From Chrysemys picta bellii (taxonomy: Eukaryota), in assembly GCF_011386835.1 (NCBI RefSeq), contig NC_088792.1:287060001-287124000 (forward strand): 64,000 nucleotides of DNA, in the 5' to 3' direction. The notes beneath the pieces were generated by a model. The model made no database searches. It was given only the letters and a program-made list of their open reading frames with translations, and was not told the origin of the DNA. Below are positions 1 to 43,661 of the stretch, piece by piece. The position numbers and the translations under genes were made by a program. Position 1 is the stretch's first letter, and every line of letters begins with the position of its first letter.

Positions 1-1077
1 CCCGATACCAGTCGAGAAACTCTGCTTTTTCCCTGGGCATCATGCTTTCTACACCATAGTGCTCTACGCCGGGCATAGACCCCATGTCATTTTGATTTTT
101 CTCAAGTGTTAAAAAAATGTGGAAAATACCCTTTGCACCCTTCAAACCCCATCGCCTGCAGGAGCTTGCTAAGCTTCATGGGCAAGAAGTTTAAAGAGTC
201 TATAAAACGAATGCCCAGGACCTTAACTTCCACATACATTAGTTTACTTCCCTGAGTGATCAATTCTAGGCACTTCTTTTCCTTCAGTAACTGTCTAACG
301 ATGAAATACACATTGTAACCTTTGGAATTGTGCGCTAGGAATATGTAGTCCTGGAACTCTTTGCCAATAAAGGTCTTAATAGCCATAGAAAGACACTCAT
401 CGCCCTTAAATTCCCAGGACTTTTCCAGCTTTAGGGACATAGCAAAAATGTGTGCAACCCAATCTCCTGCGTGTATTCAAAATCATAAAAAAACATACTT
501 TTCTGAGGATTCAGGCTTTCTAAGGCTGTCCCCTCACCATTCTCTAACTTAATCCTATTAGATTTCTTACAAAAAGTCTTTTTCTTAAGCAGGGTTCTGT
601 CACTTTTTGTGCGGACCAGACGGTCAACATAACTCTGTAAGCAGGCATCTTCCGGTTTGGGCATTTTCTTTAAAACATGATCAGGGTCTCCACTGAATTG
701 CACAGCATTTATCAAGGTCACCCCTTGCATTAAATGTTCTTGGGTTAGGCACAGAAATTGCATAGCATAACCTATGGCAATAATAGTGTTCAATAAGCTT
801 TCCAAACACAGCTCAGCACACAAGCCCCGGAGCTTGCAGTTTATATCCATTGAAGTCCAAGTCACACGGTCATGGTGCCAGGGGGCTGGTGCATCTATGA
901 CACAGCCCTCAGAATCTTCAAAAAGCTTTTCCCTAAGACAGTGATTAAGAACAGCGCAAACAGCAACACGTACAATAGTCCGCAACATTTTTTACGCTCA
1001 CGACGTGGCACTGGCTCAGCGAGTTCCATGCCAAACCTCCTCCTAAACTCCTCATAGCCATCATCCTTGGAGTTCAT
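1..1077 (-). pseudogene. Protein-primed family B DNA polymerase, 5' portion, disrupted (left-arm copy, no Harbinger insertion)
   Basis: Frame-broken ORFs 895..1095, 431..988 and 102..440. A 10-bp deletion relative to the right arm lies near 450, and there is a stop after FFNT. Confidence 0.85.
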
Positions 1078-2134
1078 CTTCGCTGCTTGATGCAATGCTG
1101 ACCAGGGCCTCCGGATCCTCTAGAAAGGCATCGTCGAGCTGTCAAGAGATTTTTAGACAAGAAACAAGTGTAAGTTCCCATTGCTTCTTTTTAGATTTAC
1201 ACAACCCCAGGTTCCTAACCCCATTACACCCCATCATCGACTGTCGCTTCTTAATCATTCATTTACCTGAGCGATGTCTTTTCCATTCACCTTGTCCGCC
1301 GGTGACTCCCCCAAGCCATGATCCCCTTCCTCCTCCAGGGTGGTGGACAACGAGAGGCCACCATGCTCATCGGGGTGTGTCATGAGCGGTTGGGCTTCGG
1401 GTTTGGCTTCTGGCATATCCATCAATGGCTGGGCCAAAGGAATCCCCTTGGCTGCTCCCTCATCCTCTTCAGAACTGTCGCTGCTGTAACATTTTCTCCA
1501 CACAAGTCCAAAGGTCTTCGGGGTTAAAACAAAGTCCAAAGTTCTCACGGGGGTGGCAAAGGAGTCCATGTTTCCTCTCAGCCTTTCCATGATTTCTAAA
1601 ACACGTCTTCCTGGTAAGAGATGGCCTCCTCTGCCCAGCGCTGGGACTTATGGGGTGATGGTGCTGCATTCTGATTGGCAGAGGGCATTGGGAGGAGTTC
1701 TTAGAGGGGTCACACGACCCTCTTCTGGGTGGTTCACCCCATCCCAGAACCTGCCCTATTTTGGTCAAATCTCCTTTCGGAGCAATCCTCTGCAGCCGAA
1801 ACTCATCGCGATTGGTAGAAGGTGGTGGGAGGAGTTCTTAGAAGGGTCACACGAACCACTTCCGGACTGGTCACCCCACCCCAGAATTCCTCCCAATTGG
1901 TCAAATCTCCTCTCGGGGTGGTCCCCAGTGGCTGAAACCCCTCCTGATTGGTAGAGAGCAGTGGTAGGAGTTCTTAGAGGGGTCCCATGACACACCTTGC
2001 TTCTGGTCATGTGTCCGCCTTGACCCCGGAAGTAATACCCCCATGGGGTGGGACTTCCAATGACCGGTGGGCAGGGCTTATTGGGTTAAGGTGTGGGGTT
2101 AATGTTTGATTGACAGTAGGGCCCTTATACTACT
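1..2134 (-). mobile_element. Polinton/Maverick remnant, mirror copy (terminal inverted repeat plus 5' part of pPolB), truncated by the window edge
   Basis: Minus-strand terminus AGTAGT ends at 2134 next to the GGAGTG target copy (2135-2140). pPolB exonuclease motifs FFYDFEYTQ, AHNSKGY and RFIDSLNFLPMKL lie in ORFs 431..988 and 102..440. Confidence 0.9.
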
Positions 2135-3863
2135 CACTCCTGCTACCCAAAATTGGAAGAAGAGAGCGGCAACTATAATACTGGGCAGTATTAGCTGTTG
2201 TCCTACTGCTCAGATGCTGTAAGTGAGAGAAGGATGAGGCCGTGTAAAGTAGCCTGGGTTGATTTTTATTACTCAAAGTGTTTTTATTACACATCAGGAC
2301 ATCTAGTCATTCTGATGGACGTGCAGCCTCTGGACAAGCTCAGTGATAAGCATGTACATTATACTGCTTGCTCAGGGGTCATTACTATAGGAACAGTCAA
2401 GTACCAGCCCAGATCCTCAAATACACCTGAGCTCTAGACTCTGGGTTGTTCTAAATTATGCTGTCTTGAAACAGCCATTGCTGCACTGGAGATTGCTGGA
2501 GCACAACGCACACTGTGTGTGCCATCTTCTGTTTCCAGCTCACACCCCATATACTTGGGTGGGAAGCTAGGAGTTAGTGACATACAGCCAGCTACACTGG
2601 CAGTACACTATATATGCTAGTTCTCTGTGTGTTAGGGATTTGCACATGCTGGGGAAATCCTAGCTGCCTCTTAGGGCAGCTTTATGGCTACTTTGTCCTG
2701 CTCCACTGCAACATAGGGCAGCAAAAAGGTGACTTTACCACTAATCCCACCCCTATTTATGCACCTACATGTGATTGTTAGGAGTCAAAGTTTAGGTATC
2801 CAGGTTTGGAAAATTCACTCACCTGGCATAAAGTTGTCTGATGTCAACCAAAGGACAAATATGCCTATAAACATTAGTCCCCTTGTTTTTCAAATATCTA
2901 TTTTGAACACCACAGTGCTGATAGAGATTTAATCAGCACGGCTGCAGGTGGCTATAATGTCTAACTGCAGATTTTAGTGCTTAACTTTAGCCACCCAAGG
3001 CCTTTGTATTTGTATTGCCCAATCCTATGAGTTGCTGAGTGTTCTCAAACTCCCACTGATGTTATTGGGAGATAAGGATGCTCTGCCCTTAAGAAAAGGT
3101 GCTCAGCAGATATAACTCATCCTCCAAAGTTAGCTACTATGATCCTCCACCTCATAGAAAAAGGTCACTGAATGGTCAGGTTTCTAGTCTCCATCACCAG
3201 CTCATTCTCCAGTTTACTGTCCCCCGGGTTCAGGGCCTGTGGGGATCACCAGGCAGCAGTTAGCAGAAGAGGGCGAAAGGCAGAGGGAGTCTGGGATGTT
3301 ATTGCTTATAGCTCTCAATGGGGAGACAATGTTCCTGTAACAGTTGAATATTGGAAGGAAATCAATAGAGACCCCTGCTGAATTGACACATTCCGCTCAT
3401 TCAAGAGCGACTATATTAAGTAATATGGGTTCTCCTAATCTGTGTTGGTGTTTGCTTTCTATACCGTATCCAGCAGCTTTTCCCGGTCCATGTTATCATA
3501 TTGGTATTCCCTAGTATTCTCCACTCTGTTTATGTGTATTAAGGGGCACTGGACAAATACTCATGACTCTTCACATTTCTTTTTCAGGTGCTGGCCAAGT
3601 ATCTCACAAACAACGTCATCTGTAAATAACCCAGCTCCAGATTTTGGATTTACTGTGCACACATTTCCTATTAAACTGTTTGAAGTATCTGTTTCAATTG
3701 CTCAGAGGCCTGATTTCTTCTTTCAGAGAAATTGGGGCTTCCTGCATGTCCACTGTAACCATGATGTGGGAGCTTCCTCCTTTACCCTTTCTCTGCAGAG
3801 ATGGAAGAAGACCTCAGTTCAGTGCCTCTCTGGGGTTTCTAACCACTCTTCCAGGATCCCCAC

Positions 3864-4675
3864 TGTGACGAAATGGGGGAATTTTCTTATATTTTTGTGG
3901 TTTTCCAATGATTTGCATGCAGAGAGAGTGGGACTCAGTGTCCCTGGGTGTTACTGGTTTAACGAGGTGAGAGGAGAGGGAGTTTGTTGTTCCAGAGGAC
4001 CGGAGAGGGAACTTGGGACCCCAGCCGATGGCCTGGAGGATGGACACCCCAGCGACCGCTGACCTGATGACTCAGAGACCCAGCTCAGGAGTCACAGCCG
4101 GTTCTAGCCAGTGGGAGGACAATGGGCTGTGAAGAAAGGACCCCATGACCCAACCAGCCGGTTCCAGCCAGAGGAGGGCAGAGAGGAAAGGAGGCCCAGA
4201 CGACCCTGTTTACCTGGAGAGAAGACAATGGACAGAGGGGGACTTGGGGCTGGTGATCTGGTGATCTCAGATGCAGCTGGGAAGCAGGGGGGCTCTGGGC
4301 TGGAGAGGACGGGCAGGCAGAGCCCACCTGGATGCAAGGAGATTGGGATGTACTGGGCTGAGGGAGGTCAGGCCTGAGGCCCTGAGTGTTTCCTGTGTTG
4401 TGTTCAATGCTCAATAAACCCTCCTGTTTTACGCTGGCTGAGAGTCACTCCGGTCTAGAGAACAGGGTTGCGTCATCCCCTTCAGGGGGAGGGAGGCCCC
4501 GGGGGGTCCAGAGCGAGTGGACTCCCTGAGAGGGCCCACGGCGAGAGACAGACGTGCTAAGGCTCAGAGAGGTGCGGCTCCAGGAGGTGGAGGGGCCTAA
4601 CCCCGAGAGAGAGTGAACCCCCGAGAAGGGCTGTCTCACTGAAAGGGGTGCCACCTCCCACTCCTACGGACCGCA
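3864..4675 (+). mobile_element. LTR-like fragment (mirror copy at 30898..31446 is shorter)
   Basis: Starts TGTGACGAAATGGGG and has AATAAA at about 4413. No matching second LTR or target duplication was found. Confidence 0.45.
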
Positions 4676-7320
4676 CAGGAAATGGTGCTGGTGAGGAGGG
4701 TCTCTTCAGGTCCTTGTCCAGTCAGTGGACAACACCAGCCGGGGGAGCTCTCTGAACATGGGTGGCAGGGGTGGAACGATGGGGTTGAGAGGCTGGGAAC
4801 TCGCTCACTCCAGTGACTGCCAGGCTGCAGAGGACAAACTGCCAGGGGCCCCAGCAAGGAACAGGACAGCACCTACCTCCTGCTCGTCCTGAGGCTCAGA
4901 CTCACTCTGCCCCATGTCTGCTGCTGGCCCCGCTCCCAGGCCCGTCCCAGAAAGGTGCCTGAGAACAAGCAGAGACGTTTGTGCTGTGCCCTTTGGGGGA
5001 AGCCAGGGTTGACCGTGCACAGCTCCCATGACCCCCTAGCACCATAGATCTCCTTACTCACCCTCCCAATAGTTTCCCTCCCTCACAGAGGGCCCCATTC
5101 CCCCCACCCGACCTCCCCAAGACAGCACCCTCCCAGCCAGCCTGTTACTTCCTGCTGGTTCCTGGCTGGGAGAGCAGGTCACGAGGCAACATGGGGCTGG
5201 CCCTTCCCTCCCTGATCCTCACCCTACTGCCCTTGACCTGAACTGCAGACACACCTGGGAAGCAGCTGGTCCTGTGGGGCTCCCCACCAGTGCTAGCCCC
5301 ACTGCTGGGGGAAGGAGTGTTGCTGCTTGACCATCTGTCAAAGGAGAAAGGTCCCAGGCAGAGTCCAGACCCTGCCCACTCACCTCCTGAGCCAGTGGTG
5401 TCCCTGCCCCATTCCAGGGCAGACGGGGCCTCTGCACCTGCCCTCCAAGTCACCTCCTTGTCTATCACCAGACACAGGCACCATGACTCAGACCCCAAGC
5501 CCCTGCCAGCCAGTGCAGAGTGCGGGGTGTGGAGGAGAGAGTCCCAGTTCACACTGTGGAAGTGGGCAATTTCCAGTTCAGGACAGGGCTGGGCACTGGG
5601 GGTCAGGCCTGTCCTGAGACCAAGGGCTGCTTCCCAGCATGGGCAGACTGGTACACATGAGTTAGCCTGGTTCCAATAGCAGCGGGGCCATGGCAGATTG
5701 TTGACTCCCACCTGAGGATGTTCCCTGGGGTGGGCAGGATTGTACTCTGGCGGCCACCCGCACACTGGGGCCACACTGCTACTGTTAGCGCACTAGCTTG
5801 AATAAAACTGTGCCTCTGTCCACCTGGCTAGGGAGCAACCTCCTAGCTGCTGTGTAGATAGACCGGGGTGACCAACCTGAGCCTGAGAAGGAGCCAGAAT
5901 TTACCAATGTGCATCGCCAAAGAGCCACAGTAACACATCAGCAGCCCCCCGTCAGCTCCTCGCACCCGCCAGCAGCACCGCAGATCAGCGCCTAACTCTC
6001 CATCCCTGTGCCTCCCACCAGCTGCGATCAGCTGTTTTGTGGTGTGCAGAAGGCTTGGGGGGAGGGGAGGAGGAGGAGCAAGGGCACGGCAGATTCTGGG
6101 GAAGGGGCGGGGGCCTTGGGGGAAGGAGTGGAGTGGGGCTGAGGCTTGGGACAGAGCCAGGGCTTGAGCAGTGAGCACCCTGTAGCACGCTGGAAAGTTG
6201 GCGCCTGTAGCTCCAGCCCTCGAGTGTTTCTAGTGTAGACATACCTTGATGAGACTCAGGCCTTTTAGAAGTACAATAGAAGGGTTAGAACAGTTCTGGA
6301 GAAGGGAAACTTCTCGAGTATTGATGTAACAACAGTCATCTTGGTTATCACCAAGGATCAAACCCAGGACCTTGTAACTGTATGACCCACTACTGTTTGA
6401 GCTAAGGGACGAACTCCCATAGGTACGAGCTGTAGCAGAACGAGACCCGTGGTGGACCAGCCCCTAGAGGACACATAACACACACTGATCAATGAGATAG
6501 ACAGAGAAAGCTTAAGTGAGTATTAACCAGGTGATGTGTGGACACACACCAGGCTTTTAGGGCCGAATGTATTGCTGACTGATTACAGGCTCAGTTGAAA
6601 GTTGTCAGATAGACGGGGCTTAAGGGATCAATGGAGTTAAAGGAAGAAAACACCTGCTGGGTTTCAGTAGATCATCAACTTTGTATTCTGGTAGGAAGAA
6701 AGGACGGCCCTTGTGGCTAAAATGCTAGGCTAGGACTCCAGTGATCAAGCTTCCATTCCCAGCTCTGTCCTAGAGTCCCTGTGTGTGTGACCTTAGGTGT
6801 GTCACTTAGGCCAAGGTTTTCAAAATTGCCTTGTGATTTTGGTTGCCTAACCTGAGACCTTAAAGGGGCCTGATTTTCAGAGGGTGAGTGCTCAGCACTT
6901 TTGAAAGTCAGGGCCCTTTTAAGAGGTCTCAAATCACGAGACACTTTAGAAAACCTTAGCCCTGCAGATGTTGACCTGCTGTAATTGTCCTGCCTCTCTT
7001 TCTGTTGCTAGATGTTACATTTAAATACCAGACTGAGACCCCACAGATAAAAGAGCAGTTGGAGATGCGTAAAGATGTCTTTCTGCAGGTACATGGAAGG
7101 GGTTTATTTGGGCTTTGAGGGTTTTCACACAGAACACACAGAAAACTCTAAGCCTGAGGATTCTCAGCTTATCCAGGGTTTACCACTGACTTCAGTGGGA
7201 GCAGAATCAGTCCAACACAAAGTGCTTTTGAAAATTCGACCGTATCATGCTTAGGTGTGTGACGCCCCCACTATACATCAGAGTTCTGCAGTTAAGGCAC
7301 CAGCCGGAGATCCCGGAAGT

Positions 7321-7421
7321 CAGATTTCAGAGTAGCAGCCGTATTAGTCTGTATCCGCAAAAAGAACAGGAGTACTTGTGGCACCTTAGAGACTAACAAA
7401 GGTATTTGTGCATCAGCTTTC
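7321..7421. repeat. Penelope-like repeat fragment (mirror at about 24235..24336)
   Basis: The stretch agtagcagccgtattagtctgtatccgcaaaaagaacaggagtacttgtggcaccttagagactaacaaa resembles an abundant turtle repeat terminus; recognised from memory only. Confidence 0.5.
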
Positions 7422-10027
7422 AGAGTTCGGCTCCCATCTCTACCCCAAACTCAGTGTGACTTTGGGCAAATTGCTCAGTCTCTCTGTGCACCGGCCCAGG
7501 GCCCCCCAAAGCTCTAATCCGCTTCTGCTTGAGACAAGAGCAAGGCCGGCTGGCTTTCCTCTCGGAAAGAAAACCCTTCGCTCTGGTCTATGCCGTCTGT
7601 CCTGGGCTGGGCGAAAAATGAGCATGAGAATTTTTCAAAGTCTCCTTTAAAGGACCCCAAAAAAGGGAGGCAGGGGGAGGCATCCGTCATCTCCTCATTT
7701 TTTTTTTCCATTGACCAATTCAAACCATTACCGAGAGCAGGGATCTCTGTCCCCTCTCCCTGGCCTTCCATCCAGGGCAGGTGGAAGGTCCACGGCTCCC
7801 CATAGCTGCCTGCACGACTGTTACCCCAACCCAGCTCCAGCTTCTGCTCTGGCCTGGGGCCTCAGGGACCAAAGAGCTGCAGCCGGGCCGTGGTAAGAGC
7901 AGACAGCTGTGGGGAGCCGCGGACCCTCCATCTACCCTGGGTGGGGGGCCCGGAGGGCAGGGACACAGGCTGGGGGCTGCTCTTGAGTACCCCCACCCTG
8001 CACAGGTGGCAGGTCTGCAGCTTCCCACAGTTTCCCAGGATCCCCGGGCCTCTCTTACCCTGGCCGGGCTCCAGCTTCCAGCCTGGTCAGGAGATGGGGA
8101 CTCAGCGGAAGAGGAGGGGCAAGGAGCCAGGCCCGTGGCAGAAAACTGGGAAGTCCATGGCCTGTAAGGCCCCCCTGCCCAGTTCTGGCACCTCTAGCTG
8201 TATATATTGTACAATGAAATGTAAATATAATATTTACATCCCAGCTCATTTATTTTATAATGATCTGGTAAAAAGGAGAAAGAAAAGCCATTTTGCAGTA
8301 CTAGTGGGCTGTGACACTCTCGTATTTCTATGTCGCATTGTGTAAGCAAGTTGTTTTTAACGGAGGTGACACCTGGGGGAACGCAAGACAAATCAGTCTC
8401 CTGAAAAGGGGCCAGTGGTCTGGAAAGGTTCAGAGCCACCGTCCTGGCACACACACGGCATTCTGCTGCCACAGCCTCCTAGCGAAGTCCCTGTGTGCCT
8501 GGGAGCGAAGGAAAGCGCTGGGTTTCCCCATGGGGCAGCGAGCTGTGCAGCTGGCCCTGCCAAACAGGCCTCTTCCCATAGGATTCACTGATGAGCGATA
8601 AGGCCACGCTTTGGCTCCCCCTCGACTGTCCTGTGCACTGAGCTTTGCAGAAGTTGATTTTATAGTTTACTCCCATCACAATTATTCCTCTGTGCCCCCC
8701 AGGACCCTCCCCGCTGTGCACCTGGCAAATTACAGGATGGGGTGCTAGAAACAGACTGCTGCTAGTTGGTTCCTAGTCCACTCCCTGACCAAGTGCCCAC
8801 CCCTTTAGTCAGTGGCTCTCAAAGTGTGGGGTGCACCCCCCCATGGGAGCACAGAGGAATGTTTTGGGGGAGCACATGGCATGGCTGGAGCCAACCTGCA
8901 GGGCAGGGCAGGGAGGGAGTGCCACACTTCCATCCCTGCTCTGTCCCCAGAGCAGCTTTGCCCCTAACTGCAACTCCACACCCCACTGCCTGCCCCAGCC
9001 CAGCTCTGTTCTCATTCCCGCTCTGCCCCCAGACCAGCTCCGACCCCACCTCCCCCTTCAGCCCAAGCTTCACTGCTGAGGAAGCCTGGGCTGTGCAGTA
9101 ATGGGCGGGGGGAGGGGGGGCGGGCATGGACAGATTCAATTTCTGGTAAGTGGGGGGAGCGACTGGAAAACTTTGAGCATCATTGACCTGACTGACACTC
9201 TCAGAACAGTGACCTGACTTTAGTCACAACCTTTTGATTATCTCAAAACCAGGACCCTACACTCAGCATATCTGAACCTCCACCAGGGTCATGTTCCCCA
9301 CTGATTTAAAGAGAAAAAGGGGTTCTATGAAGGAGGCTGGGCACTGACTTGGTCTATTTCCACAGTTAGACAAAATAGTGACTCAAAGACACTGACAGGC
9401 AGTCAACACACTGTTTATTTCCGCTCTATTTCAGTTGACATCCCAGAGGGGTCTATGATCTAAGGTAACAATGGAGAGGTAGGTTTGAAAACTCTAAAGA
9501 CACGTAAAGAGGGGCCTTAGAGTCTAAAGAGGCAGAGAAGCCTCTCCAAGTACCTTTCAGGATCATGGACCAGGTGTTGGGATCCCAGCCCCCTCCCTAC
9601 CATTGGATACCACCCAGTTCCTGACACCCTCCTTCAGAACAGTGACTGGCTTTTGTCACAATTGTTCTTCTAATACCTCAGACTGGACCCTACAACCCAC
9701 AGCTCTGAACGCTCAGCAGGGTCCTGGTCCACCCCTTCACATGAAAGCGATCGCTATAAACAGGGAGGGGAACTGCCCTGGCAGAAACGAGGGGTGGGGT
9801 CTCTCTCTACAGGTTAAACATCAAATAGAGAATTAAAGGAACTAGAGCTCACCACGACACAAAAGTTTATACTTAAAATAAAATCCTTTAATTTGTAGTT
9901 CAGGAGAGGGATAAAATTGTACAAACCCCCAAACCCTAATACAAAGCATCGCACAGTCCCTGCTCCTCCAGGGAGACACTTAGAGCACAGAACAGAGTCC
10001 CAGGGTTACTGGAGTCGGTGGCTGGTT

Positions 10028-10681
10028 TCAGGAATCTCTGGGGCTGGTCCCCTCGCTCTCTCCTCCTGTCTCCATCTTCTCGCTGCTCCCCGGCTCCTTT
10101 CCCTCCGTGGCCAGGTTTCCTTCTCCTGCCTTCACCCCCTGGCAGACGGTGATGGGAACGGCTCTCCCTTCTGCAGCTGGCAGGGCCAGATGTGGCGCCT
10201 CGATGCAGAGCTGCCCATCCTGGGACAGGGAGCAGAGCACGGCCTCCCCGTTCACGTCTTCCGGCAGGAGAGTTTCTCTGCGGATCTCTCTGTATTCGTG
10301 GGAGCAGACTCCAGCCTCCGACGCCGTTTTCTTCTCCTGCTTCCCCGTCACCTTCCTCCCGTCCACTCTCACCATCAGCTCAGCTGGGGAGAAGCCGCTC
10401 ACGTCCATGGAGAGCTGGAACTTGTCCTTCCCCTGCGCCTGGGAGCCGGGCTCCTTCCCAGCCCCCTCCGCCAGGGACCGGCTGCTCGGCCTCGGCCTCC
10501 TCCCCTCGCCCTCCCCGCAGAGAAGGGGAGAAGCCAGAAGGAGGGAGTGTCTCAGTCGCTCCATCTCCTCCAGGTGCGTCTGCATGTCCCCCACCAGCTG
10601 GGCCAAGAGGCTGTGGGGCCCCGGCCCCAGGAGCCTGGGCAGTGGGGCGCTGCTGCCAAGCCACACTCGGAGCGGGAGCAT
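10028..10681 (-). CDS. hsp30: HSP30-type small heat-shock protein, copy A (217 aa, intronless)
   Basis: Alpha-crystallin domain FQLSMDVSGFSPAELMVRVDGRK..EYREIRRETLLPEDVN..VLCSLSQDGQLCIEAPHLALP resembles amphibian/fish Hsp30. ATTAAA poly(A) variant on minus at 9887-9892. Confidence 0.9.
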   Translation of the reverse strand: MLPLRVWLGSSAPLPRLLGPGPHSLLAQLVGDMQTHLEEMERLRHSLLLASPLLCGEGEGRRPRPSSRSLAEGAGKEPGSQAQGKDKFQLSMDVSGFSPAELMVRVDGRKVTGKQEKKTASEAGVCSHEYREIRRETLLPEDVNGEAVLCSLSQDGQLCIEAPHLALPAAEGRAVPITVCQGVKAGEGNLATEGKEPGSSEKMETGGESEGTSPRDS

Positions 10682-10806
10682 CCTGCCCCCCCGGGGCCTG
10701 GAGCCGCTGGGCCGAGTTCAGCTGCTGAGACGCTGCTGCTGGAGCTGCCTCTGCCTGACTCCCTGCGCGGCTGCTGCTCACTGGCTCCGGCAGCCCCCGC
10801 GCCGCC

Positions 10807-10851
10807 TTTTATAGCCTGCTCGGGCCGCGCCGGGCCCGTCGGGAACCTTCT
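10807..10851 (-). promoter_or_regulatory. TATA box (10807-10813) and heat-shock element with one mismatch (10837-10851), copy A
   Basis: Minus strand reads aGAAg gTTCc cGACg followed by TATAAAA. Copies B and D have GAA in the third unit. Confidence 0.85.
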
Positions 10852-33300: not shown

Positions 33301-35164
33301 TACTTCCGGGGTCAAGGCGGACACATGACCAGAAGCAAGGTGTGTCATGGGACCCCTCTAAGAACTCCTACCACTGCTCTCTACCAATCAGGAGGGGTTT
33401 CAGCCACTGGGGACCACCCCGAGAGGAGATTTGACCAATTGGGGGGAATTCTGGGGTGGGGTGACTAGTCCGGAAGTGGTTCGTGTGACCCTTCTAAGAA
33501 CTCCTCCCACCACACTCTACCAATCGCAATGAGTTTCGGCTGCAGAGGATTGCTCCGAAAGGAGATTTGACCAAAATTGGGCAGGTTCTGGGATGGGGTG
33601 AACCACCCAGAAGAGGGTCGTGTGACCCCTCTAAGAACTCCTCCCAATGCCCTCTGCCAATCAGAATGCAGCACCATCACCCCATAAGTCCCAGCGCTGG
33701 GCAGAGGAGGCCATCTCTTACCAAGAAGACGTGTTTTAGAAATCATGGAAAGGCTGAGAGGAAACATGGACTCCTTTGCCACCCCCGTGAGAACTTTGGA
33801 CTTTGTTTTAACCCCGAAGACCTTTGGACTTGTGTGGAGAAAACGTTACAGCAGCGACAGTTCTGAAGAGGATGAGGGAGCAGCCGAGGGGATTCCTTTG
33901 GCCCAGCCATTGATGGATATGCCAGAAGCCAAACCCGAAGCCCAACCGCTCATGACACACCCCGATGAGCATGGTGGCCTCTCGTCGTCCACCACCCTGG
34001 AGGAGGAAGGGGATCATGGCTTGGGGGAGTCACCGGCGGACAAGGTGAATGGAAAAGACATCGCTCAGGTAAATGAATGATTAAGAAGCGACAGTCGATG
34101 ATGGGGTGTAATGGGGTTAGGAATCTGGGGTTGTGTAAATCTAAAAAGAAGCAATGGGAACTTACACTTGTTTCTTGTCTAAAAATCTCTTGACAGCTCG
34201 ACGATGCCTTTCTAGAGGACCCGGAGGCCCTGGTCAGCATTGCATCAAGCAGCGAAGATGAACTCCGAGGATGATGGCTATGAGGAGTTTAGGAGGAGGT
34301 TTGGCGTGGAACTCGCTGAGCCAGTGCCACGTCGTGAGCGTAAAAAATTATGCGGACTATTGTACGCGTTGCTGTTTGCGCTGTTCTTAATCACTGTCTT
34401 AGGGAAAAGCTTTTTGAAGATTCTGAGGGCTGTGTCATAGATGCACCAGCCCCCCGGCACCATGACCGTGTGACTTGGACTTCAATGGATATAAACTGCA
34501 AGCTCCGGGGCTTGTGTGCTGAGCTGTGTTTGGAAAGCTTATTGAACACTATTATTGCCATAGGTTATGCTATGCAATTTCTGTGCCTAACCCAAGAACA
34601 TTTAATGCAAGGGGTGACCTTGATAAATGCTGTGCAATTCAGTGGAGACCCTGATCATATTTTAAAGAAAATGCCCAAACCGGAAGATGCCTGCTTACGG
34701 TGTTATGTTGACTGTATGGTCCACACAAAAAGTGACAGAACCCTGCTTAAGAAAAAGACTTTTTGTAAGGCCTGGTCTACACTAGGCGTTTATGTCGAAG
34801 TTAGCGCCGTTAAATCGAATTAACCCTGCACCCGTCCACACTGCGATGCTATTTAGTTCGACATAGAGGTCTCTTTAATTCGACTTCTGTACTCCTCCCC
34901 GACGAGGGGAGTAGCGCTAAATTCGACATGGCCATGTCGAATTAGGCTAGGTGTGGATGGAAATCGACGCTAATAGCTCCGGGAGCTATCCCACAGTGCA
35001 CCACTCTGTTGACGCTCTGGACAGCAGTGCGAGCTCGGATGCTCTGACCAGCCACACAGGAAAAGCCCCGGGAAAATTTGAATTTGAATTCCTTTTCCTG
35101 TCTGGCCAGTTTGAATCTCATTTCCTGTCTGGACATCGTGGCGAGCACAGCAGCACTGGCAACG

Positions 35165-37211
35165 ATGCAGAGCTCTCCAGCAGTGATGGCCATGCAGTCT
35201 GTGAATAGAAAGAGAGCCCCAGCATGGACTGATCGTGAAGTCTTGGATCTCATCGCTGTGTGGGGCGATGAGTCCGTGCTTTCCGAGCTGCGATCCAAAA
35301 GAAGGAATGCAAAGATCTACGAGAAGATCTCTAAAGACATGGCAGAGAGAGGATACAGCCGGGATGCAACGCAGTGCCGCGTGAAAATCAAGGAGCTGAG
35401 ACAAGGGTACCAGAAGACCAAAGAGGCAAACGGACGCTCCGGATCCCATCCCCAGACATCCCGTTTCTACGAGGCACTGCATTCCATCCTCGGTGCTGCC
35501 GCCACCACTACCCCACCAGTGACCGTGGACTCTGAGGATGGGATACTGTCCACGGCCGGTTCCTCAGACATGTTAGGGGACGGGGAAGATGAGGAAGGAG
35601 ATGAGGAGGGCGAGGCAGTTGGCAGCTCTCACAACGCTGATTTCCCCGACAGCCAGGATCTCTTCATCACCCTTACAGAGATCCCCTACGAAGCATCCCC
35701 AGCCATTACCCCGGACACAGAATCTGGTGAAGGATCAGCCAGTAAGTGTTGTAAACATCTAAACATTTATTTTTAACAAAACAGGAATATTAACAATTAA
35801 AAGAATGGGTTGTTCATGATTAGTGTGCCCTAGGCGCTTAACGGTTTAGTAAGGGGCAGTGCAAGTTTTGAAAAGAAATCTAGCAATGTCCGGTTTTCAG
35901 TGATTGTCCTGCACAAGCCGCTCTACTGTGTATTCCCTGCTACTGCAGCTACAGTAAAATGCGGTCTATATGTGCGGGGATAGAGCAGTAATCCTCCTGG
36001 GACATCTCGATGAAGCTCTCCTGGAGGTAACTTGAAAGCCGTTGCATGAGGTTCTTGGGGAGAGCGGCCTTATTGGGTCCTCCGAAGTACGACACGTTGC
36101 CGCGCCACGAGATTATCAGGTACTCGGGGATCATTGCTCTGCACAGCAGGGCGGCATACGGCCCTGGTCTTTGGAGGCTTTCCCGGAGCATTCTCTCTTT
36201 GTCGCTCTCGGAGATCCTCATCAGGGTGATGTCGGCCATGGTGACCTGCTTTTAATTAGGTAGGGGAATGTTAGTGTTGGGACTGCTTTCCCGTTCCTTT
36301 ACAGAACTGTCACCGCTGGTTTGCAGCCACGCGGTGGAGGCGGGAGAGGGGCAGCCGAAAGGGATCGTTCCCGGGGACAGCCGCGAGGGGGTGGGACAGG
36401 GGCAGAGTTCCCGCTTGCCGGATTGCTGGCAGCAGGGACTGACATTGATTTAAATGTGAAATGAGGCCAGTGGTAATATAAAAGTTTTAAACTGCCACAA
36501 GTGTACGGCTTACCATGTCTGCCTGCAACAGAAATTCCGTTGTGCTGCCTCGCTTCTCAAATGTGCTGTTCAAGACCCCAGGCACAGAATGCGAAGGCCG
36601 AGAATTCGACCTTGTGCTGAGTGCGCATGTGAAAGGTGCTGTGCATGGTCTTGTTCACAGAGAAAGACTATGTTCTTTGTTCACAACTACATTTATCTTT
36701 CAGAGGAATTCACTCCCTTTTTCCCATTTCCACAGCCCCGTCTGCGACTGTCTCACAACCTAGCCTGGAATCACACTCCCAGAGGCTAGCGCGGATTAGG
36801 CGTAGGAAGAAGAGGACACGGGAGGACATGTTCTCTGAGCTTATGGCCTCTTCCCAAGCCCAGGCAGCACAGCAGACCCAGTGGCGGGAGAACTTGACCC
36901 GAATGCACCAAGCCAACATGGATCGGGAGGAGAGGTGGCGGCAGGAAGACCAGCAGGCGACTCTAACGCTGCTTGGACTACTGAGGGAGCAAACGGACAC
37001 ACTCCGGCGCCTTGTGGATGTTCTGCAGGAACGGAGGCAGGAGGACAGAGCCCCGCTGCAGTCCATCTCTAACCGCCCTCCCCCGCCACCAAGTCCCATA
37101 CCCACCTCACCCAAAGTGCAAAGAAGGAGAGGCGGCAGAGTCCCTGCTAACTCTCACTCCACCCCTGCAGAGAGCTCTAGTAGCAGAAGGCTCTCATTTC
37201 CCAAAATTTGA
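35165..37211 (+). CDS. Harbinger Myb/SANT (trihelix-like) DNA-binding protein, two exons 35165-35741 and 36736-37211, 350 aa
   Basis: RKRAPAWTDREVLDLIAVWG..RGYSRDATQCRVKIKELRQGY. A GT donor at 35742 and AG acceptor at 36734-36735 join in frame (1053 bp). Predicted coiled-coil C-terminus; AATAAA at 37283-37288. The start ATG is uncertain (35165, 35186 or 35192). Confidence 0.88.
35949..36239 (-). CDS. Candidate BEN-domain protein (96 aa) nested antisense in the Myb gene intron
   Basis: YAALLCRAMIP..GNVSYFGGPNKAALPKNLMQRLSSYLQESFIEMSQEDYCSIPAHID aligns by eye with the BANP-type BEN pattern. Strong Kozak context gtcaccATGG, upstream AG acceptor with CTAAC branch point, downstream AATAAA (minus 35766-35771). 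Confidence 0.6.
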   Translation of the reverse strand: MADITLMRISESDKERMLRESLQRPGPYAALLCRAMIPEYLIISWRGNVSYFGGPNKAALPKNLMQRLSSYLQESFIEMSQEDYCSIPAHIDRILL

Positions 37212-37960
37212 AAAGTTCTTTCCTTCCCGCCTGACACAAGCCCACGTCCAAGTTTCACCTCCCAATGCCATGTGTAGTTGATAATAAAAAATTCGTTTCT
37301 GTTAACTACTGTTTCAATCATGTTCTTTTGGAGGAGGAGGGGAAAGGGGGTTGGAAATTGGACAGGACAGTCTCCTTTGGCAGGGTACATAGTCGGGGGC
37401 AGGCACAGCAGCAGGGCACATACACAGTGCAGTGATGCAGTGACTAGTTGCCCCGGTTAGTCTGGGAGGTTGTTTTGATGTAATGTTGGGGGGGGTGGGT
37501 TGCTCTGTGACTTTGTGGCGGGGGAGGGCAGTTACAGATCTTAAGCGCCGGTCCTTAGACAGGATCACAGAGCCACACAGCATGGGATCTGTAACCGTCC
37601 TCCCCCTGCCACAAAGTCAAATAGACCTCCCATACACACAGTCCCGATCAGGAGGGGTGACAGGCTCCGTTGAAACAAGCATCCCACCGCAGCGGAGCCT
37701 GTCAATCCTTGAGTTTAGAAGCTGCATTCGCATCACAACACTAGACCCGCCCCGCACCACAGTCTGCGTCCCAGTTTTAAAAAATTCCCGCTAAAACAGT
37801 ATTAAAGAAAACGGTGTGCTTTAACAAAGTAGAACTATTTTTATTTCGACACGTGTGTTGGAGGGGGGGTGAAGGGGGTATGTAACTGGATAGGATAGTC
37901 AACATTACCTGGGTAAAGAAACGGGGGCAGGTTTAGCTTCTCAGTACACAAACTATAAAA

Positions 37961-39244
37961 TCACAGGTTACCCTGCTCACTCAGGAACTTTGCTTTCAAA
38001 GCCTCCCGGATGCACAGCGCTTCCCGCTGGTCTCTTCTAATCGCCCGGCTGTCTGGCTGTGAGTAATCACCAGCCAGGCTATTTTCCTCAACCTCCCACC
38101 CCGCCATAAAGGTCTCCCCCTTGCTCTCACAGAGATTGTGGAGCACACAGCAAGCTGCTATAACAATGGGGATATTGGTTTCGCTGAGATCACAGCGAGT
38201 CAGTAAGCTTCTCCATCTCCCCTTGAGACGGCCAAAAGCACACTCCACCACCATTCTGCACTTGCTCAGCCGGTAGTTGAAGAGTTCTTTTTCAGTGTCC
38301 AGGGCGCCAGTATAGGGCTTCATGAGCCAGGGCATTAGCGGGTAGGCTGGGTCCCCGAGGATGACTATAGGCATCTCCACATCCCCAACAGTTATTTTGT
38401 GGTCCGGGAAGTAAATACCTTGTTGCAGCCGTCTAAACAGACCAGAGTTCCTGAAAACACGAGCGTCATGAACCTTGCCCGGCCATCCCACGTAGATGTT
38501 GGTAAAACGTCCCCTGTGGTCCACCAGTGCTTGCAGCACCATGGAAAAGTATCCCTTTCGGTTAATGTACTGGGTGGCCTGGTGGTCCGGTGCCAGGATA
38601 GGGATGTGAGTTCCATCTATGGCCCCACCGCAGTTTGGGAATCCCATCGCTGCGAAGCCATCTATGATCGCCTCCACGTTTCCCAGGGTCACTACCTTTG
38701 GCAGCAGTACATCAACGATTGCCTTCGCTACTTGCATCACAACAACCCCCACGGTAGATTTGCCCACCCCAAACTGGTTCGCGACTGACCGGTAGCTGTC
38801 TGGCGTTGCAAGCTTCCACAGGGCTATGGCCACTCGCTTCTGTACACTCAGTGCAGCTCGCAACCGGGTGTCACTGCGCTTCAGGGCAGGGGACAGCAAC
38901 TCACAAAGTTCCAGGAAAGTTCCCTTCCGCATGCGAAAGTTTCGCAGCCACTGGGATTCATCCCAGACCTGCAGCACTATGCGGTCCCACCACTCAGTGC
39001 TTGTTTCCCGTGCCCAGAATCGCCGTTCCACGGCATCAACATGACCCATTGCCACTGTGATGTCCTCGGCGCTGGGTCGCCTGCTTTCTGACAGGTCTGT
39101 GCTACTCTCAGACTTCAGGACATCACCGCGGTGCCGTAGCCTCCTTGCCTGACTTTTCTGCATCTGCCTCAGGGAAACCTTTATGATAAGCTGCGAGACG
39201 TTGAGAGCGGCCACAACTGCAGCGATGGTCGCAGCGGGCTCCAT
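37961..39244 (-). CDS. Harbinger (HARBI1-like) DDE transposase, 427 aa, uninterrupted
   Basis: GAIDGTHIPI, KGYFSMVLQALVDHRGRF, WPGKVHDARVF, ILGDPAYPL and RMVVECAFGRLKGRWR are all present. AATAAA on minus at 37840-37845. Confidence 0.95.
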   Translation of the reverse strand: MEPAATIAAVVAALNVSQLIIKVSLRQMQKSQARRLRHRGDVLKSESSTDLSESRRPSAEDITVAMGHVDAVERRFWARETSTEWWDRIVLQVWDESQWLRNFRMRKGTFLELCELLSPALKRSDTRLRAALSVQKRVAIALWKLATPDSYRSVANQFGVGKSTVGVVVMQVAKAIVDVLLPKVVTLGNVEAIIDGFAAMGFPNCGGAIDGTHIPILAPDHQATQYINRKGYFSMVLQALVDHRGRFTNIYVGWPGKVHDARVFRNSGLFRRLQQGIYFPDHKITVGDVEMPIVILGDPAYPLMPWLMKPYTGALDTEKELFNYRLSKCRMVVECAFGRLKGRWRSLLTRCDLSETNIPIVIAACCVLHNLCESKGETFMAGWEVEENSLAGDYSQPDSRAIRRDQREALCIREALKAKFLSEQGNL

Positions 39245-41692
39245 GCTCGGAGTACAGTGGCGTCCGCGCTGTCAATGACTGGAAAAGCGCGCGAACTGTT
39301 TTCCCGCCGGCGCTTTCAGGGAGGGAGGGCGGGAGTGATGGACGGATGACGACAGTTTCCCAAAAGCACCCTCGACTCATTTTGTTACCCAGAAGGCATT
39401 GCCGGCTACACCCAGAATTCCAATGGGCAGAGGGGACTGCGGGAACTGTGGGATAGCTGACCACAGTGCACCGCTTCGAATGTCGACGCTATCACCGTTA
39501 GTGTGGACGCACAAAGTCGAATTACTGTCCTTAGTGTGGACACACACGTTCGACTTTGCAATATCGATTACAAAAATTCGATGCAAGTAAAATCGAACTA
39601 CTCTCGTAGTGTAGACAAGGCCTAAGAAATCTAATAGGATTAAGTTAGAGAATGGTGAGGGGACAGCCTTAGAAAGCCTGAATCCTCAGAAAAGTGTATT
39701 TTTTTATGATTTTGAATACACGCAGGAGACTGGGTTGCACACTCCCAATTACATTTTTGCTATGTCCCTAAAGCCGGAAAAGTCCTGGAATTTAAGGGCG
39801 ATGAGTGTCTTTCTATGGCTGTTAAGACCTTTATTGGCAAAGAGTTCCAGGACTACACATTCCTAGTGCACAATTCCAAAGGTTACCATGTGTACGTCAT
39901 CGTTAGCCAGTTAGTGAAGGAAAAGATGTGCCTAGAATTGATCACTCAGGGAAGTAAACTAATGTATGTGGAAGTTAAGGTCCTGGGCATTCGTTTTATA
40001 GACTCTTTAAACTTCTTGCCCATGAAGCTTAGCAAGCTCCTGCAGGTGATGGGGTTTGAAAGGTGCAAAGGGTATTTTCCACATTTTTTTAACACTTGAG
40101 AAAAATCAAAATTACATGGGGCCTATGCCCGGCGTGGAGCACTATGGTGTAGAAAGCATGATGCCCAGGGAAAAAGCAGAGTTTCTCGACTGGTATCGGG
40201 ACCACAGGTATGAGATGTTTGACTTGCAGAAAGAGCTCGCGTATTACTGTGAGCAGATGTCAAAATTTTGAGACAGGCTTGTATCCTATACAGAGAAGAG
40301 ATTATGAAAATGACGGAGAAGGGAGATATAGTAGAGAGAGGACCTGGTAAATTCACTGAGATAAAACTGTGTATAGACAAACGATATCCGCCTATATTAC
40401 AAACCTAACCCCAGGGAAGAAATTCACTATTATGATTTTACCAGCCTGTACCCTTTCGTAAGCAAAACCCAAGAATACCCTATCGGACACCCCAAAATAC
40501 TTTATGACAAATTTGGACCCCTTGCAAATTATTTTGGAATTGCAAAAGTTAAAATGTATCCCCCACGAGGCTTCTTTTCCCCATTGTTACCTGTCAGAGT
40601 GGGTAACAAGCTTATGTTCCCGCTATGACAAACCTGTGCTGAAACCGAGCAGCGGGAGATGTGGCACCCACACTGACGAGGAGAGGGCCATCCTGGGGAC
40701 TTGGTGCACGGTGGAATTGAATGCGGCCATAGCGAAGGGATACACAGTGGCTAAAATATATGAAATCTGGCATTTTAATGAAAAATCTGATGAACTGTTT
40801 TCGGAGTACATAAAATTACACCTCCACCAGAAACAAGAGGCTTCAGGGTATCCCAGCTGGTGCACAGACAAAGAAAAACAAAATAAGTACATTAACGATT
40901 TCTACCAGAAAGAAGGCGTGCATTTACGCCAACACGAGATCAGGTTTAACCCCGCTAAACACCAAATCGCTAAACTGTTTTTAAATTCTCTGTGGGGTAA
41001 ATTCGGCCAAAGAACAAACCTACCCAATAGCAGCATCGTGAGAAACCCTGACGAACTCTTTCAGTACCTGTTTTCCCCTCCACTACGAGGTTTCATCCTG
41101 TGAGTTTATCGACAATGAAACAGCGTGCGTGTCTTGGAAGCATGCAAAAGACTAGTACTCAGTCTCTGGAAATACCAATGTTTTCATAGCCTGTTTCACC
41201 ACTGGTTACGCCCGCTTAGAACTATACAACCTGCTAGACAGGTTGCAAGAGCGGTGCCTGTACCATGACACTGACTCGGTGAGATCTGTGAAAAGGGAGG
41301 GTGACTGGAATCACCTCTGGGGGATTATTTAGGGGACCTCACGAGCAAGATCCCGCCAGCTCAACACATCACCCAGTTTGTGTTGGCAGGCCCGAAAACA
41401 TACAGGTATAAGCTGTAGAGAGGAAAGGCCTGTATGAAAGTCAAAGGTTTTACCCTGAACGTAGCAAACTGTGAAAAGATCAACTTGGACAGTCTGAAAG
41501 ATCTAGTCCTGGACTATTGCATGGGCCTGTGAGACAACACCTCAAAAAAGATAGAGGTGCAGCAGCCCTCTATCGTAAGGAACAAAAATCAATGGCAAAT
41601 AGAGACAAAAACCCTTAATAAAACACAGAAAGTTGTTTACAACAAGAGGGTCCTAGGAGAAGGGTTTAAAACCCTGCCCCATGGCTTTTAAA

Positions 41693-41820: not shown

Positions 41821-41829
41821 TGGAGAACA

Positions 41830-42374: not shown

Positions 42375-42376
42375 GT

Positions 42377-43656: not shown

Positions 43657-43661
43657 GTTGA

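What the first reader, a model, noticed from the sequence alone, without database searches (positions are those of the whole stretch)
1..40200. A palindrome of at least 40 kb centred on a heat-shock gene cluster
Arms 1..12931 and 17904..40200 are reverse complements at about 96-98% in spot alignments, with a 5 kb spacer, and the left arm continues off the window (seen). Near-identical inverted arms carrying multicopy genes resemble ampliconic palindromes kept similar by arm-to-arm gene conversion, best known from mammalian sex chromosomes (established analogy). That conversion acts here is inference. Arm-specific insertions and many substitutions argue against a simple assembly mirror artefact.
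Basis: partly seen in the sequence, partly recalled or inferred. Interest (0 to 1): 0.75.

Follow-up and report, generated by a model that had tools for sequence, protein, structure and literature searches.

The report
Nested HSP30 inverted duplication, painted turtle
A real mirror-image duplication of at least 40 kb on a painted-turtle autosome surrounds four small heat-shock (HSP30) genes, but only the genes are kept alike by copying between copies, so this is an ageing inverted duplication rather than a self-repairing sex-chromosome-type palindrome.

Summary
Window 1-12931 and 17904-40200 are reverse complements (BLAST blocks 95-97.5%; 2.08% substitutions over 9,679 aligned outer-arm bases), and the left arm is still matching at base 1.

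The window is Chrysemys picta bellii, a species with temperature-dependent sex determination and no sex chromosomes, on a 291-Mb scaffold.

The centre holds four HSP30C-like genes in two head-to-head pairs:
- A, B and D are intact.
- C has a frameshift and has lost its heat-shock element.

Coding regions are 97.6-98.9% alike in every pairing. The DNA starting about 25 bp past each stop codon tells the copies apart: A/D 95.6%, A/B about 92%, C against the others about 61%. So copy C is ancient, and the B/C "inner arm" reflects gene-family conversion.

My preferred model is that the old tail-to-tail B/C pair seeded one large inverted duplication of everything left of B.

The outer arms look passive. 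They carry a Harbinger and a 3.9-kb right-only segment, identity is below 99%, and no identical tract is longer than chance predicts. Divergence along the arms is uneven (0.7-3.8%) and I cannot explain why.

Contigs from four public runs show both arm forms.

The scan had already reported HSP30 pair conversion 138 kb away. This is a new member of a known kind.

The parts
1..9970 (.). Left outer arm, cut by the window edge. Bases 1 to about 2134 are the end of a decayed Polinton; the rest is interspersed repeats and low-copy DNA.
   Evidence: reverse complement of 21697-40200 once the right-only insertions are removed, 2.08% substitutions. PolB fragment at 102-440(-). High-copy segments shown by contig word depth.
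21697..40200 (.). Right outer arm
4422..4671 (.). Left-only 250 bp, lying inside a very high-copy interspersed repeat
   Evidence: No match to the right arm or to the right-only segment. Contig word depth about 1e5 in bins 4349-4746.
26986..30896 (.). Right-only 3.9-kb segment. No TIR, LTR or Pfam hit was found.
   Evidence: In 4 of 4 runs a contig fits from L4672 and then continues into sequence unlike L.
34770..39622 (.). Harbinger/PIF transposon inserted in the right arm only, inside the Polinton polymerase region
   Evidence: TSD TAA, TIR GGCCTGGTCTACACTA / GGCCTTGTCTACACTA, empty site at about L566-569. DDE_Tnp_4 ORF 37961-39244(-) and Myb/SANT ORF 35078-35776(+).
10028..10681 (-). HSP30C-like gene A, 217 aa, intact, with a 6-bp in-frame deletion in the alpha-crystallin domain. 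HSE with one mismatch at 10838-10850, TATA at 10800-10815.
12249..12908 (+). HSP30C-like gene B, 219 aa, intact. Perfect HSE at 12081-12093, TATA at 12116-12131.
17927..18576 (-). HSP30C-like copy C, a probable pseudogene. It has a 1-bp deletion near 18390 that shifts the frame, and a 58-bp promoter deletion near 18707 that removes the HSE.
20943..21587 (+). HSP30C-like gene D, 214 aa, intact. Perfect HSE at 20774-20786, TATA at 20809-20824.
10682..12248 (.). A-B divergent intergenic region: 38-bp repeats, a unique core, and a 41-bp repeat with 4.7 copies
   Evidence: Collinear in mirror image with 18577-20942.
18577..20942 (.). C-D divergent intergenic region, with the 37-bp array 18871-20001 (30.7 copies)
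12932..17903 (.). Spacer. Its two ends, F_B (12932 to about 13641) and F_C (about 17470-17903), are old inverted copies of the HSP30 3' flank. About 3.9 kb between them is unique and has no detected gene.
   Evidence: (F_C against F_A/F_B/F_D about 61% over about 430 bp, E 1e-23 to 1e-24).
9366..10027 (-). F_A, the 3' flank and 3'UTR of gene A. Its copies are F_D (21588-22280) and F_B.
   Evidence: A-alone 15, D-alone 13, B-alone 37 sites, giving the tree ((A,D),B).

Best explanation
This is a genuine inverted segmental duplication on a painted-turtle autosome. It is the youngest layer of a nested series of inverted duplications in the HSP30 small-heat-shock gene cluster.

Shown:
- Four HSP30C-like genes sit as two head-to-head pairs, A><B and C><D.
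- Their coding regions, leaders and core promoters are kept 97.6-99% alike in every pairing.
- Identity collapses about 25 bp past the stop codon to values that differ by pair: A/D 95.6%, A/B and B/D about 92%, C against the rest about 61%.
- Hence the gene units are homogenised by interlocus gene conversion, and the flanks record three duplication ages.

Inferred:
- An old tail-to-tail pair B...C, about 5 kb apart, acted as an inverted repeat.
- A replication or repair template switch inside that homology copied everything to the left of B in reverse onto the far side of C. What was copied is the intergenic region, A, its flank, at least 10 kb of host DNA and part of an already resident Polinton.
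- This created D and the right arm. It also explains why the join is invisible: it lies within the converted gene unit.

Since then the arms have mostly drifted apart:
- 2.1% substitutions
- a Harbinger insertion and a 3.9-kb difference
- repeat-array expansion
- decay of copy C

Meanwhile A, B and D remain heat-inducible genes with HSE and TATA elements.
For: Inverted arms.

Genes, frameshift and promoter deletion.

HSE and TATA.

Identity by region: CDS 97.6-98.9% in all pairings, against a C flank of 56-59% in the 4-way alignment.

F_C homology is about 61% with E 1e-23, and it is co-linear from the same offset after the stop codon. F is low-copy by contig depth, so this is not a shared high-copy TE.

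The 3-way flank tree is ((A,D),B).

The whole A-B unit is collinear in mirror image with D-C, including the unique intergenic core at 93.5%.

The Harbinger has a TSD and an empty site.

No identical tract is longer than chance predicts.

HSP30 proteins cluster by lineage across turtles.

The assembly is HiFi plus Hi-C plus Bionano, with heterozygosity 0.48-0.55%.

Contigs of four runs from four studies (compared with the difference list):
- R-form junction at L4672 in 4 of 4 runs, with R letters at 4863 (4 of 4) and 4740 (3 of 4).
- R-type contigs: X5 record 30 has 10 other letters plus 1 gap, exactly the expected L/R differences. X15 record 23 also fits.
- L-type contigs: X1 records 3 and 6, X15 records 20 and 24.
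Against: - Divergence along the arms is significantly uneven: 0.67% to 3.8% at non-CpG sites, p about 1e-9. A single passive event does not predict this.
- The template-switch origin is inferred from the anatomy only. The switch point cannot be located.
- Contigs cannot give copy number or long-range order. No read was seen spanning the 11.7-kb centre.
- Several letters present in all four runs fit neither arm (5424, 6500, 8844). This hints at further copies or at haplotype differences.
- The left end and the outer boundary were not seen.
Confidence: 0.65

Rival explanations
1. A true ampliconic palindrome. The arms are held together by recurrent arm-to-arm gene conversion. The real age is that of the most diverged parts (4-6%), and the 0.7-1.6% stretches are older conversion tracts.
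For: Divergence is significantly heterogeneous and not explained by CpG content. It is lowest in the middle of the long uninterrupted homology block. It is higher within 250 bp of heterologies (3.1% against 1.6-1.9%) and in the inner 1.3 kb (4.4%). The intergenic core is 6.5% diverged.
Against: Identity is below the 99% criterion. No mismatch-free tract exceeds chance. The edge effect is one-sided, driven by the gene-proximal kilobase. The Harbinger and the 3.9-kb heterology persist. W-to-S and S-to-W differences are symmetric and cannot be polarised without an outgroup. No outgroup was available.
Confidence: 0.15
2. Assembly artefact. The two arms are haplotypes, or distant paralogues, of one locus joined wrongly. 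The most plausible place for a false join is the 1.1-kb 37-bp tandem array between C and D.
For: The only long low-complexity stretch (18871-20001) lies exactly where a false join would have to be. Contig data cannot show depth or long-range order. Single-arm contigs in X1 have about half the word depth of collapsed ones, which both hypotheses predict.
Against: Arm divergence is 2.1% plus TE-sized indels, about four times the heterozygosity. The window has no N gap. HiFi reads of about 14 kb easily span a 1.1-kb array, and the assembly was checked against optical maps. Both arm forms are seen in contigs of three or four independent samples under different organism labels. A and D differ by four in-frame indels.
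Confidence: 0.07
3. Not a dedicated two-arm palindrome. L and R are two members of a larger family of segmental duplications (three or more copies of the arm) within an HSP30 mega-cluster, and happen to lie inverted next to each other. The uneven divergence comes from exchanges with the unseen copies.
For: At least three further HSP30C-like proteins are encoded on the same 291-Mb scaffold outside the window. One of them shares A's 6-bp deletion. Letters in all four runs fit neither arm. Other notes of the scan report at least 16 genes and another four-gene cluster 138 kb away (not checked here).
Against: No third copy of any non-genic arm segment is in the 64-kb window. The extra proteins differ from A, B and D by 3% or more. 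The unexplained letters could be ordinary polymorphism.
Confidence: 0.13

Closest known systems
Large ampliconic palindromes of mammalian X and Y chromosomes (human Y P1-P8, primate and mouse X palindromes)
   Same: Inverted arms longer than 10 kb, a unique spacer of a few kb, and multicopy protein-coding genes in the arms.
   Different: Arm identity is 97.9%, not above 99% (abstracts). Arm-specific TE insertions are present and there are no long identical tracts. The locus is on an autosome of a species with temperature-dependent sex determination. The genes are stress genes rather than testis genes. Arm-to-arm conversion is not demonstrated.
Concerted evolution of inverted heat-shock gene pairs, for example the Drosophila hsp70 inverted pair at 87A (recalled from my own knowledge, not checked here)
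   Same: Divergently or convergently oriented heat-shock genes whose coding and promoter DNA is homogenised by gene conversion while the flanks diverge.
   Different: A different gene family (alpha-crystallin-type HSP30). The pairs here are embedded in a much larger, younger inverted duplication with about 10-20 kb of non-genic arm.
Inverted-repeat-mediated inverted duplications: fold-back or template-switch models, DUP-TRP/INV-DUP rearrangements in humans, and palindromic amplification seeded by inverted repeats in yeast and mammalian cells (my own knowledge)
   Same: A pre-existing inverted repeat (B/C) with its spacer sits exactly at the centre of a much larger inverted duplication, and the junction is hidden in the homology.
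   Different: Those cases are mostly somatic or pathogenic events observed directly. Here it would be a fixed germline event, inferred from anatomy alone.
HSP30 head-to-head pairs 138 kb further along the same chromosome (scan finding s1-335690)
   Same: Same gene family, same head-to-head pairs, and the same sharp end of homogenisation just past the stop codon. I confirmed that boundary independently in this window.
   Different: That locus was described as gene pairs only. Here one side of a pair carries at least 10 kb of additional duplicated flank, forming a palindrome of at least 40 kb.

Membership tests
Conversion-maintained ampliconic palindrome (sex-chromosome type) | Inverted arms longer than 8-10 kb with a unique spacer | tested here: met
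   L at least 12,931 bp, R 22,297 bp, spacer 4,972 bp.
Conversion-maintained ampliconic palindrome (sex-chromosome type) | Arm-to-arm identity above 99% | tested here: not met
   97.9% by substitutions; 95-97.5% per BLAST block including gaps. Criterion taken from the abstracts.
Conversion-maintained ampliconic palindrome (sex-chromosome type) | Evidence of arm-to-arm conversion: arms group by species against orthologous arms, or long identical tracts | tested here: inconclusive
   No tract longer than chance. Heterogeneity is present.
Conversion-maintained ampliconic palindrome (sex-chromosome type) | Location on a sex chromosome or in a non-recombining region | tested here: not met
   The organism is Chrysemys picta bellii, a species with temperature-dependent sex determination (Shaffer 2013 TSD section; also my own knowledge).
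Inverted segmental duplication | At least 1 kb, at least 90% identity, inverted, with several unrelated repeats and low-copy DNA in collinear order (so not one TE) | tested here: met
   The depth profile shows a mix of high-copy and low-copy segments. The Polinton terminus lies inside the arm.
Inverted segmental duplication | Both copies present in independent individuals | tested here: inconclusive
   R-form junction in 4 of 4 runs. L-type and R-type contigs together in X1, X15 and X5. These are contigs only, so there is no copy number.
HSP30/HSPB-type small heat-shock genes | Alpha-crystallin (HSP20) domain, uninterrupted ORF of about 215 aa, vertebrate HSP30C-like orthologues | tested here: met
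   PF00011 with E 1e-13 to 1e-17. Hits of 74-96% identity named 'heat shock protein 30C-like' in other turtles, and 41-47% in frogs.
HSP30/HSPB-type small heat-shock genes | Heat-shock element upstream of the TATA box | tested here: met
   Perfect three-unit HSE for B and D, one mismatch for A, deleted in C. Heat induction itself was not tested.
Gene family under concerted evolution by interlocus gene conversion | Paralogue identity much higher inside a sharply bounded unit than in the homologous flanks | tested here: met
   CDS 97.6-98.9% against flanks of 61-95.6%, with the boundary about 25 bp past the stop codon.
False duplication from uncollapsed haplotypes | Copies differ by about the heterozygosity, usually next to a gap | tested here: not met
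   2.1% against 0.48-0.55%. No N in the window. The inner flanks of the two arms are non-allelic at 61%.

The most novel reading that the evidence does not exclude
The HSP30 family of emydid turtles may expand by a self-propagating 'palindrome within palindrome' process. In this reading, each existing inverted gene pair seeds the next, larger inverted duplication. The resulting autosomal arms are then intermittently homogenised arm to arm, in an animal with no sex chromosomes. That would make this locus a natural model for how large palindromes are born and maintained outside sex chromosomes. It might also link HSP30 copy number to thermal or anoxic physiology.
Probability: 0.2. Interest if true: 0.55.

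Novelty: new member of a known kind. Interest (0 to 1): 0.3.

Why it matters
Large palindromes are usually discussed as a sex-chromosome speciality kept intact by arm-to-arm conversion. This locus shows the same architecture on an autosome of a reptile without sex chromosomes.

In one window it also separates two processes that are often confused:
- Gene-unit conversion, which here is strong, sharply bounded and family-wide.
- Arm maintenance, for which there is no clear evidence here.

The three flank ages (61%, 92%, 96-98%) suggest repeated inverted duplication seeded by existing inverted genes. That is a testable route of gene-family growth.

In practical terms, annotators should expect near-identical HSP30 paralogues, a pseudogene (C) and mis-mapping of short reads in this region of the painted-turtle reference.

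Tried and rejected
No other collection on hand holds turtle DNA, so the outer boundary and the species test remain open.

2. Depth-based copy number. Every run offered was stored as Logan contigs. Contig word depth gives no single-copy baseline, and the left-only 250 bp that I hoped to use as a baseline proved to be a very high-copy repeat.

3. Using the letters of other runs as an outgroup. I rejected this because bubble-popped contigs are L/R mosaics, and a single-copy orthologue would look the same.

4. Edge-of-homology test for conversion. The effect is weak and one-sided, so it is not used as support.

5. GC-biased conversion. W/S differences are symmetric (83 against 75) and cannot be polarised.

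6. Homology between the left-only 250 bp and the right-only 3.9 kb. None was found.

7. TIR or LTR structure for the 3.9-kb segment. None was found.

8. Pfam on 29 ORFs of the arms and spacer. The only hits were HSP20, Harbinger, and the Polinton polymerase and protease.

9. An absolute date. I found no turtle-specific neutral rate in the papers I read. Any figure, such as roughly 10-40 My for 2-4% at 0.5-1e-9 per site per year, rests on my recollection only.

10. Literature. No paper in the held library describes HSP30 conversion or this palindrome. The assembly paper mentions neither heat-shock genes nor inverted or segmental duplications.
Full report
**What the window is.** The 64-kb window has no N and 51.6% G+C. 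A word search with one of its proteins returned an identical protein on a 291,303,948-bp record. That record also carries NCBI proteins named "heat shock protein 30C-like [Chrysemys picta bellii]". The next-best hits are Malaclemys, Emys and other turtles. So the window comes from the western painted turtle, from a chromosome-scale scaffold. By its size this is a macrochromosome, which is my inference. The current reference for this species (SLU_Cpb5.0 = ASM1138683v2) was built with hifiasm from about 20x HiFi reads averaging about 14 kb, plus Hi-C, then scaffolded with 10x linked reads and checked against Bionano maps. Its measured heterozygosity is 0.48-0.55%. The painted turtle has temperature-dependent sex determination and no sex chromosomes (TSD section of Shaffer 2013, and my own knowledge).

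**Checking the observation.** The repeat finder and a self-BLAST confirm the inverted repeat at the stated coordinates:

| Left arm | Right arm (reverse complement) | Identity |
|---|---|---|
| 1-569 | 39623-40200 | 95.0% |
| 566-4421 | 30897-34769 | 97.5% |
| 4672-9970 | 21697-26985 | 96.7% |
| 10005-10967 | 20660-21610 | 95.8% |
| 12120-12931 | 17904-18705 | 96.4% |

Global alignment of the three outer blocks gives 9,478 matches, 201 mismatches (2.08%; 116 transitions, 85 transversions, 32 at CpG) and 16 small indels totalling 106 bp. The match is still running at base 1, so the left arm is truncated by the window. The spacer 12932-17903 is 4,972 bp.

**Arm-specific differences.**
- A 4,853-bp Harbinger sits at 34770-39622. 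It has a TAA target duplication, 16-bp terminal inverted repeats, a DDE_Tnp_4 transposase ORF and a Myb/SANT ORF. The untouched target site is at about 566-569 of the left arm.
- The right arm has 3,911 bp (26986-30896) where the left arm has an unrelated 250 bp (4422-4671).
- A 37-bp repeat has 30.7 copies on the right, against 4.7 copies of its 41-bp counterpart on the left.

**What the arms contain.** The outermost part of both arms is the end of a decayed Polinton/Maverick. Type-B polymerase fragments lie at 102-440(-) and 40504-41103(+), and an adenovirus-type protease at 41979-42380(-). The element's terminus aligns in both arms. The Polinton was therefore resident before the duplication, and the Harbinger later landed inside its polymerase region in the right arm only. 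The rest of the outer arms is a mix of very high-copy interspersed repeats and low-copy DNA (word-depth profile). Pfam finds no family in any of the ORFs of 100 aa or more that I tested. The only cellular genes found are the heat-shock genes near the centre.

**The four HSP30 genes.** All are uninterrupted HSP20/alpha-crystallin ORFs (PF00011).

| Copy | Coordinates | State | Promoter |
|---|---|---|---|
| A | 10028-10681(-), 217 aa | intact, with a 6-bp in-frame deletion | GAAGGTTCCCGAC (one mismatch), TATA |
| B | 12249-12908(+), 219 aa | intact | perfect GAAGGTTCCCGAA, TATA |
| C | 17927-18576(-) | 1-bp deletion near 18390 shifts the frame | 58-bp deletion removes the HSE |
| D | 20943-21587(+), 214 aa | intact | perfect GAAGGTTCCCGAA, TATA |

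In B and D the element lies about 25 bp upstream of GCTATAAAAGG. A and B are head to head, C and D are head to head, and B and C are tail to tail across the spacer. Because C carries two independent lesions, I call it a probable pseudogene.

**Two kinds of similarity.** In a four-way alignment the coding region plus 25 bp is 97.6-98.9% identical in all six pairings. Identity then changes abruptly.
- In the 640 bp past the stop codon (the 3'UTR and flank, "F"), a clean three-way alignment gives 15 A-only, 13 D-only and 37 B-only differences. The tree is ((A,D),B), with A/D 4.4% apart and B about 8% from either.
- The flank of C is still recognisably homologous to the other three. It starts at the same offset after the stop codon, but is only about 61% identical over about 430 bp (E 1e-23 to 1e-24).
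- F is low-copy by contig depth, so this is paralogy and not a shared high-copy transposon.

The gene units (promoter, leader and CDS) are therefore homogenised by interlocus gene conversion, while the flanks keep three different ages. In-frame indels are shared in a mosaic way. C and D share two. A shares its 6-bp deletion with another gene outside the window, P0008. HSP30 proteins of different turtle lineages cluster by lineage. Both patterns are expected under concerted evolution. I reached the boundary result for this window from my own alignments.

**Consequence for the "palindrome".** The innermost 0.8 kb of each arm (B and C) is alike because both are HSP30 units, not because C was made by the large duplication: its flank is ancient. 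Yet the whole A-B unit is collinear, in mirror image, with the D-C unit. The collinear parts include the unique intergenic core (93.5% by substitutions) and the repeat array next to B and C. D's flank then continues into about 10 kb of aligned outer arm.

The simplest history is as follows. An old tail-to-tail pair B...C formed an inverted repeat with a spacer of about 5 kb. A template switch within that homology, during replication or repair, copied everything to the left of B in reverse onto the far side of C. The join is invisible because it lies inside the converted unit. This origin is an inference from the anatomy. It matches known inverted-repeat-mediated duplication models, which I recall from my own knowledge. 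The locus thus holds three nested generations of inverted duplication: B/C with flanks at 61%, A/B with flanks at about 92%, and the large A-side/D-side arms at 96-98%.

**Are the arms kept alike by conversion?**

Against:
- Identity is below the 99% that defines the conversion-maintained palindromes of mammalian sex chromosomes.
- Two TE-sized heterologies persist.
- The longest mismatch-free aligned run is 263 bp. Random placement of 201 mismatches gives a longest run of 208-390 bp. The nominal 307-bp run spans the left-only insert.

For:
- Divergence is significantly uneven and not explained by CpG content: 0.67% at L5172-7171 against 3.8% at L8672-9970, chi-square p about 1e-9 at non-CpG sites.
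- It is somewhat higher within 250 bp of heterologies. However, that effect is driven by the gene-proximal kilobase.

Without an outgroup I cannot say which of these holds:
- the low-divergence stretches were converted
- the inner stretch received sequence from other paralogues
- local mutation rates differ

I leave this as unexplained and give active arm maintenance a probability of 0.15.

**Is it an assembly artefact?** The internal evidence says no.
- The arms differ about four times more than the two haplotypes of this animal.
- There is no gap.
- The sequences adjoining the two inner ends are non-allelic (61%).
- A and D differ by four in-frame indels.

For external evidence, all runs on offer were Logan contigs. 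I laid four runs from four studies and four organism labels on L4150-10100 and compared them with my list of L/R differences.
- In all four runs a contig fits from exactly 4672 rightwards and continues for 188-395 letters that do not fit the left arm (records 1, 9, 17, 25). This is what the right-arm form predicts. These contigs carry the right-arm letter at 4863 (4 of 4 runs) and at 4740 (3 of 4).
- X5 record 30 (7403-7892) has 10 other letters and one gap, exactly the number of L/R differences there. X15 record 23 (9075-9366) has 10 of the 13 expected.
- Pure left-type contigs also occur: X1 records 3 and 6, with 0 other letters over 8 and 4 diagnostic sites, and X15 records 20 and 24.

So both forms coexist in at least three samples.

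Limits of this evidence:
- Contigs give no copy number and no long-range order.
- Many contigs are L/R mosaics.
- A few letters seen in every run fit neither arm (5424, 6500, 8844). These may reflect polymorphism or further copies.

The one place where a false join could hide is the 1.1-kb 37-bp array between C and D, which 14-kb HiFi reads should span. I put the artefact at 0.07.

**What could not be done.** I therefore could not fetch the orthologous loci of other turtles or extend the sequence to the left. The outer boundary of the palindrome, its age relative to speciation and the decisive test for arm-to-arm conversion all remain open.

**Comparison and verdict.** In architecture this resembles the ampliconic palindromes of sex chromosomes. 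It fails two of their defining features (identity above 99%, sex linkage), and a third (demonstrated arm conversion) is untested, so I do not file it there. It is an inverted segmental duplication within a gene family under concerted evolution. Both are well-known kinds. The nesting and the apparent seeding by an older inverted pair are its most instructive aspects. No paper in the held library describes it. The scan had already found HSP30 pair conversion on other DNA of this genome (s1-335690) and a histone palindrome (s1-329916). The novelty is "new member of a known kind" and the interest is modest (0.3).

Noticed in passing
window 34770-39622: Apparently intact Harbinger/PIF element: 427-aa DDE_Tnp_4 ORF, 232-aa Myb/SANT ORF, TAA target duplication, TIRs differing at 1 of 16 bases. 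Its empty site is preserved in the other arm at about 566-569. It interrupts the Polinton polymerase region.
   Followed up: partly
window 1 to about 2134, and 33201-45841: Decayed Polinton/Maverick present in both arms. It has type-B polymerase fragments, an adenovirus-type protease at 41979-42380(-), and long terminal regions made of 133-136-bp tandem units (1667-1984, 33344-33663, 44965-45726) that are only about 83% alike between the two ends.
   Followed up: partly
window 4150-4746, 5742-6338, 7135-7532, 8329-8527: Segments of the left arm with contig word depths of 1e4 to 1e6 in all four runs, so very high-copy interspersed repeats. The 'left-only' 250 bp (4422-4671) is one of them.
   Followed up: no
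window 5424, 6500, 8844 (also 5620, 8107): In contigs of all or most of the four public runs the letter differs from both arms of the window. This could be a private allele of the assembled haplotype, or majority letters from further unseen copies of the arm.
   Followed up: no
window 18871-20001 against 11677-11860: A G+C-rich 37-41-bp repeat between the divergent promoters has expanded from 4.7 to 30.7 copies on the side whose neighbouring gene (C) has lost its HSE and reading frame.
   Followed up: no
window 9800-9830 against 13131-13136 and 21775-21780: B and D have AATAAA about 190-225 bp past the stop codon. At the aligned place A has ATTAAA within a cluster of six A-only changes. The 3'UTRs are not homogenised, although the CDS and promoters are.
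   Followed up: partly
window 5086-5307: In runs X5 and X13, two contigs of equal length lie on the same 186-222 bp. One has 1-7 differences and the other 12-15, far more than the single L/R difference expected there. This may be a hypervariable G+C-rich patch or another paralogue.
   Followed up: no
window 14967-15334: A degenerate 30-32-bp G-rich tandem repeat (about 12 copies, 62% matches) in the middle of the spacer. No ORF with a Pfam family lies nearby.
   Followed up: no
proteins P0004, P0007, P0008 (same 291-Mb record, outside the window): At least three more HSP30C-like genes of the painted turtle. P0008 shares gene A's 6-bp deletion, and P0007 shares the 'GP' deletion of C and D. This mosaic sharing of indels across distant copies fits family-wide conversion.
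   Followed up: partly
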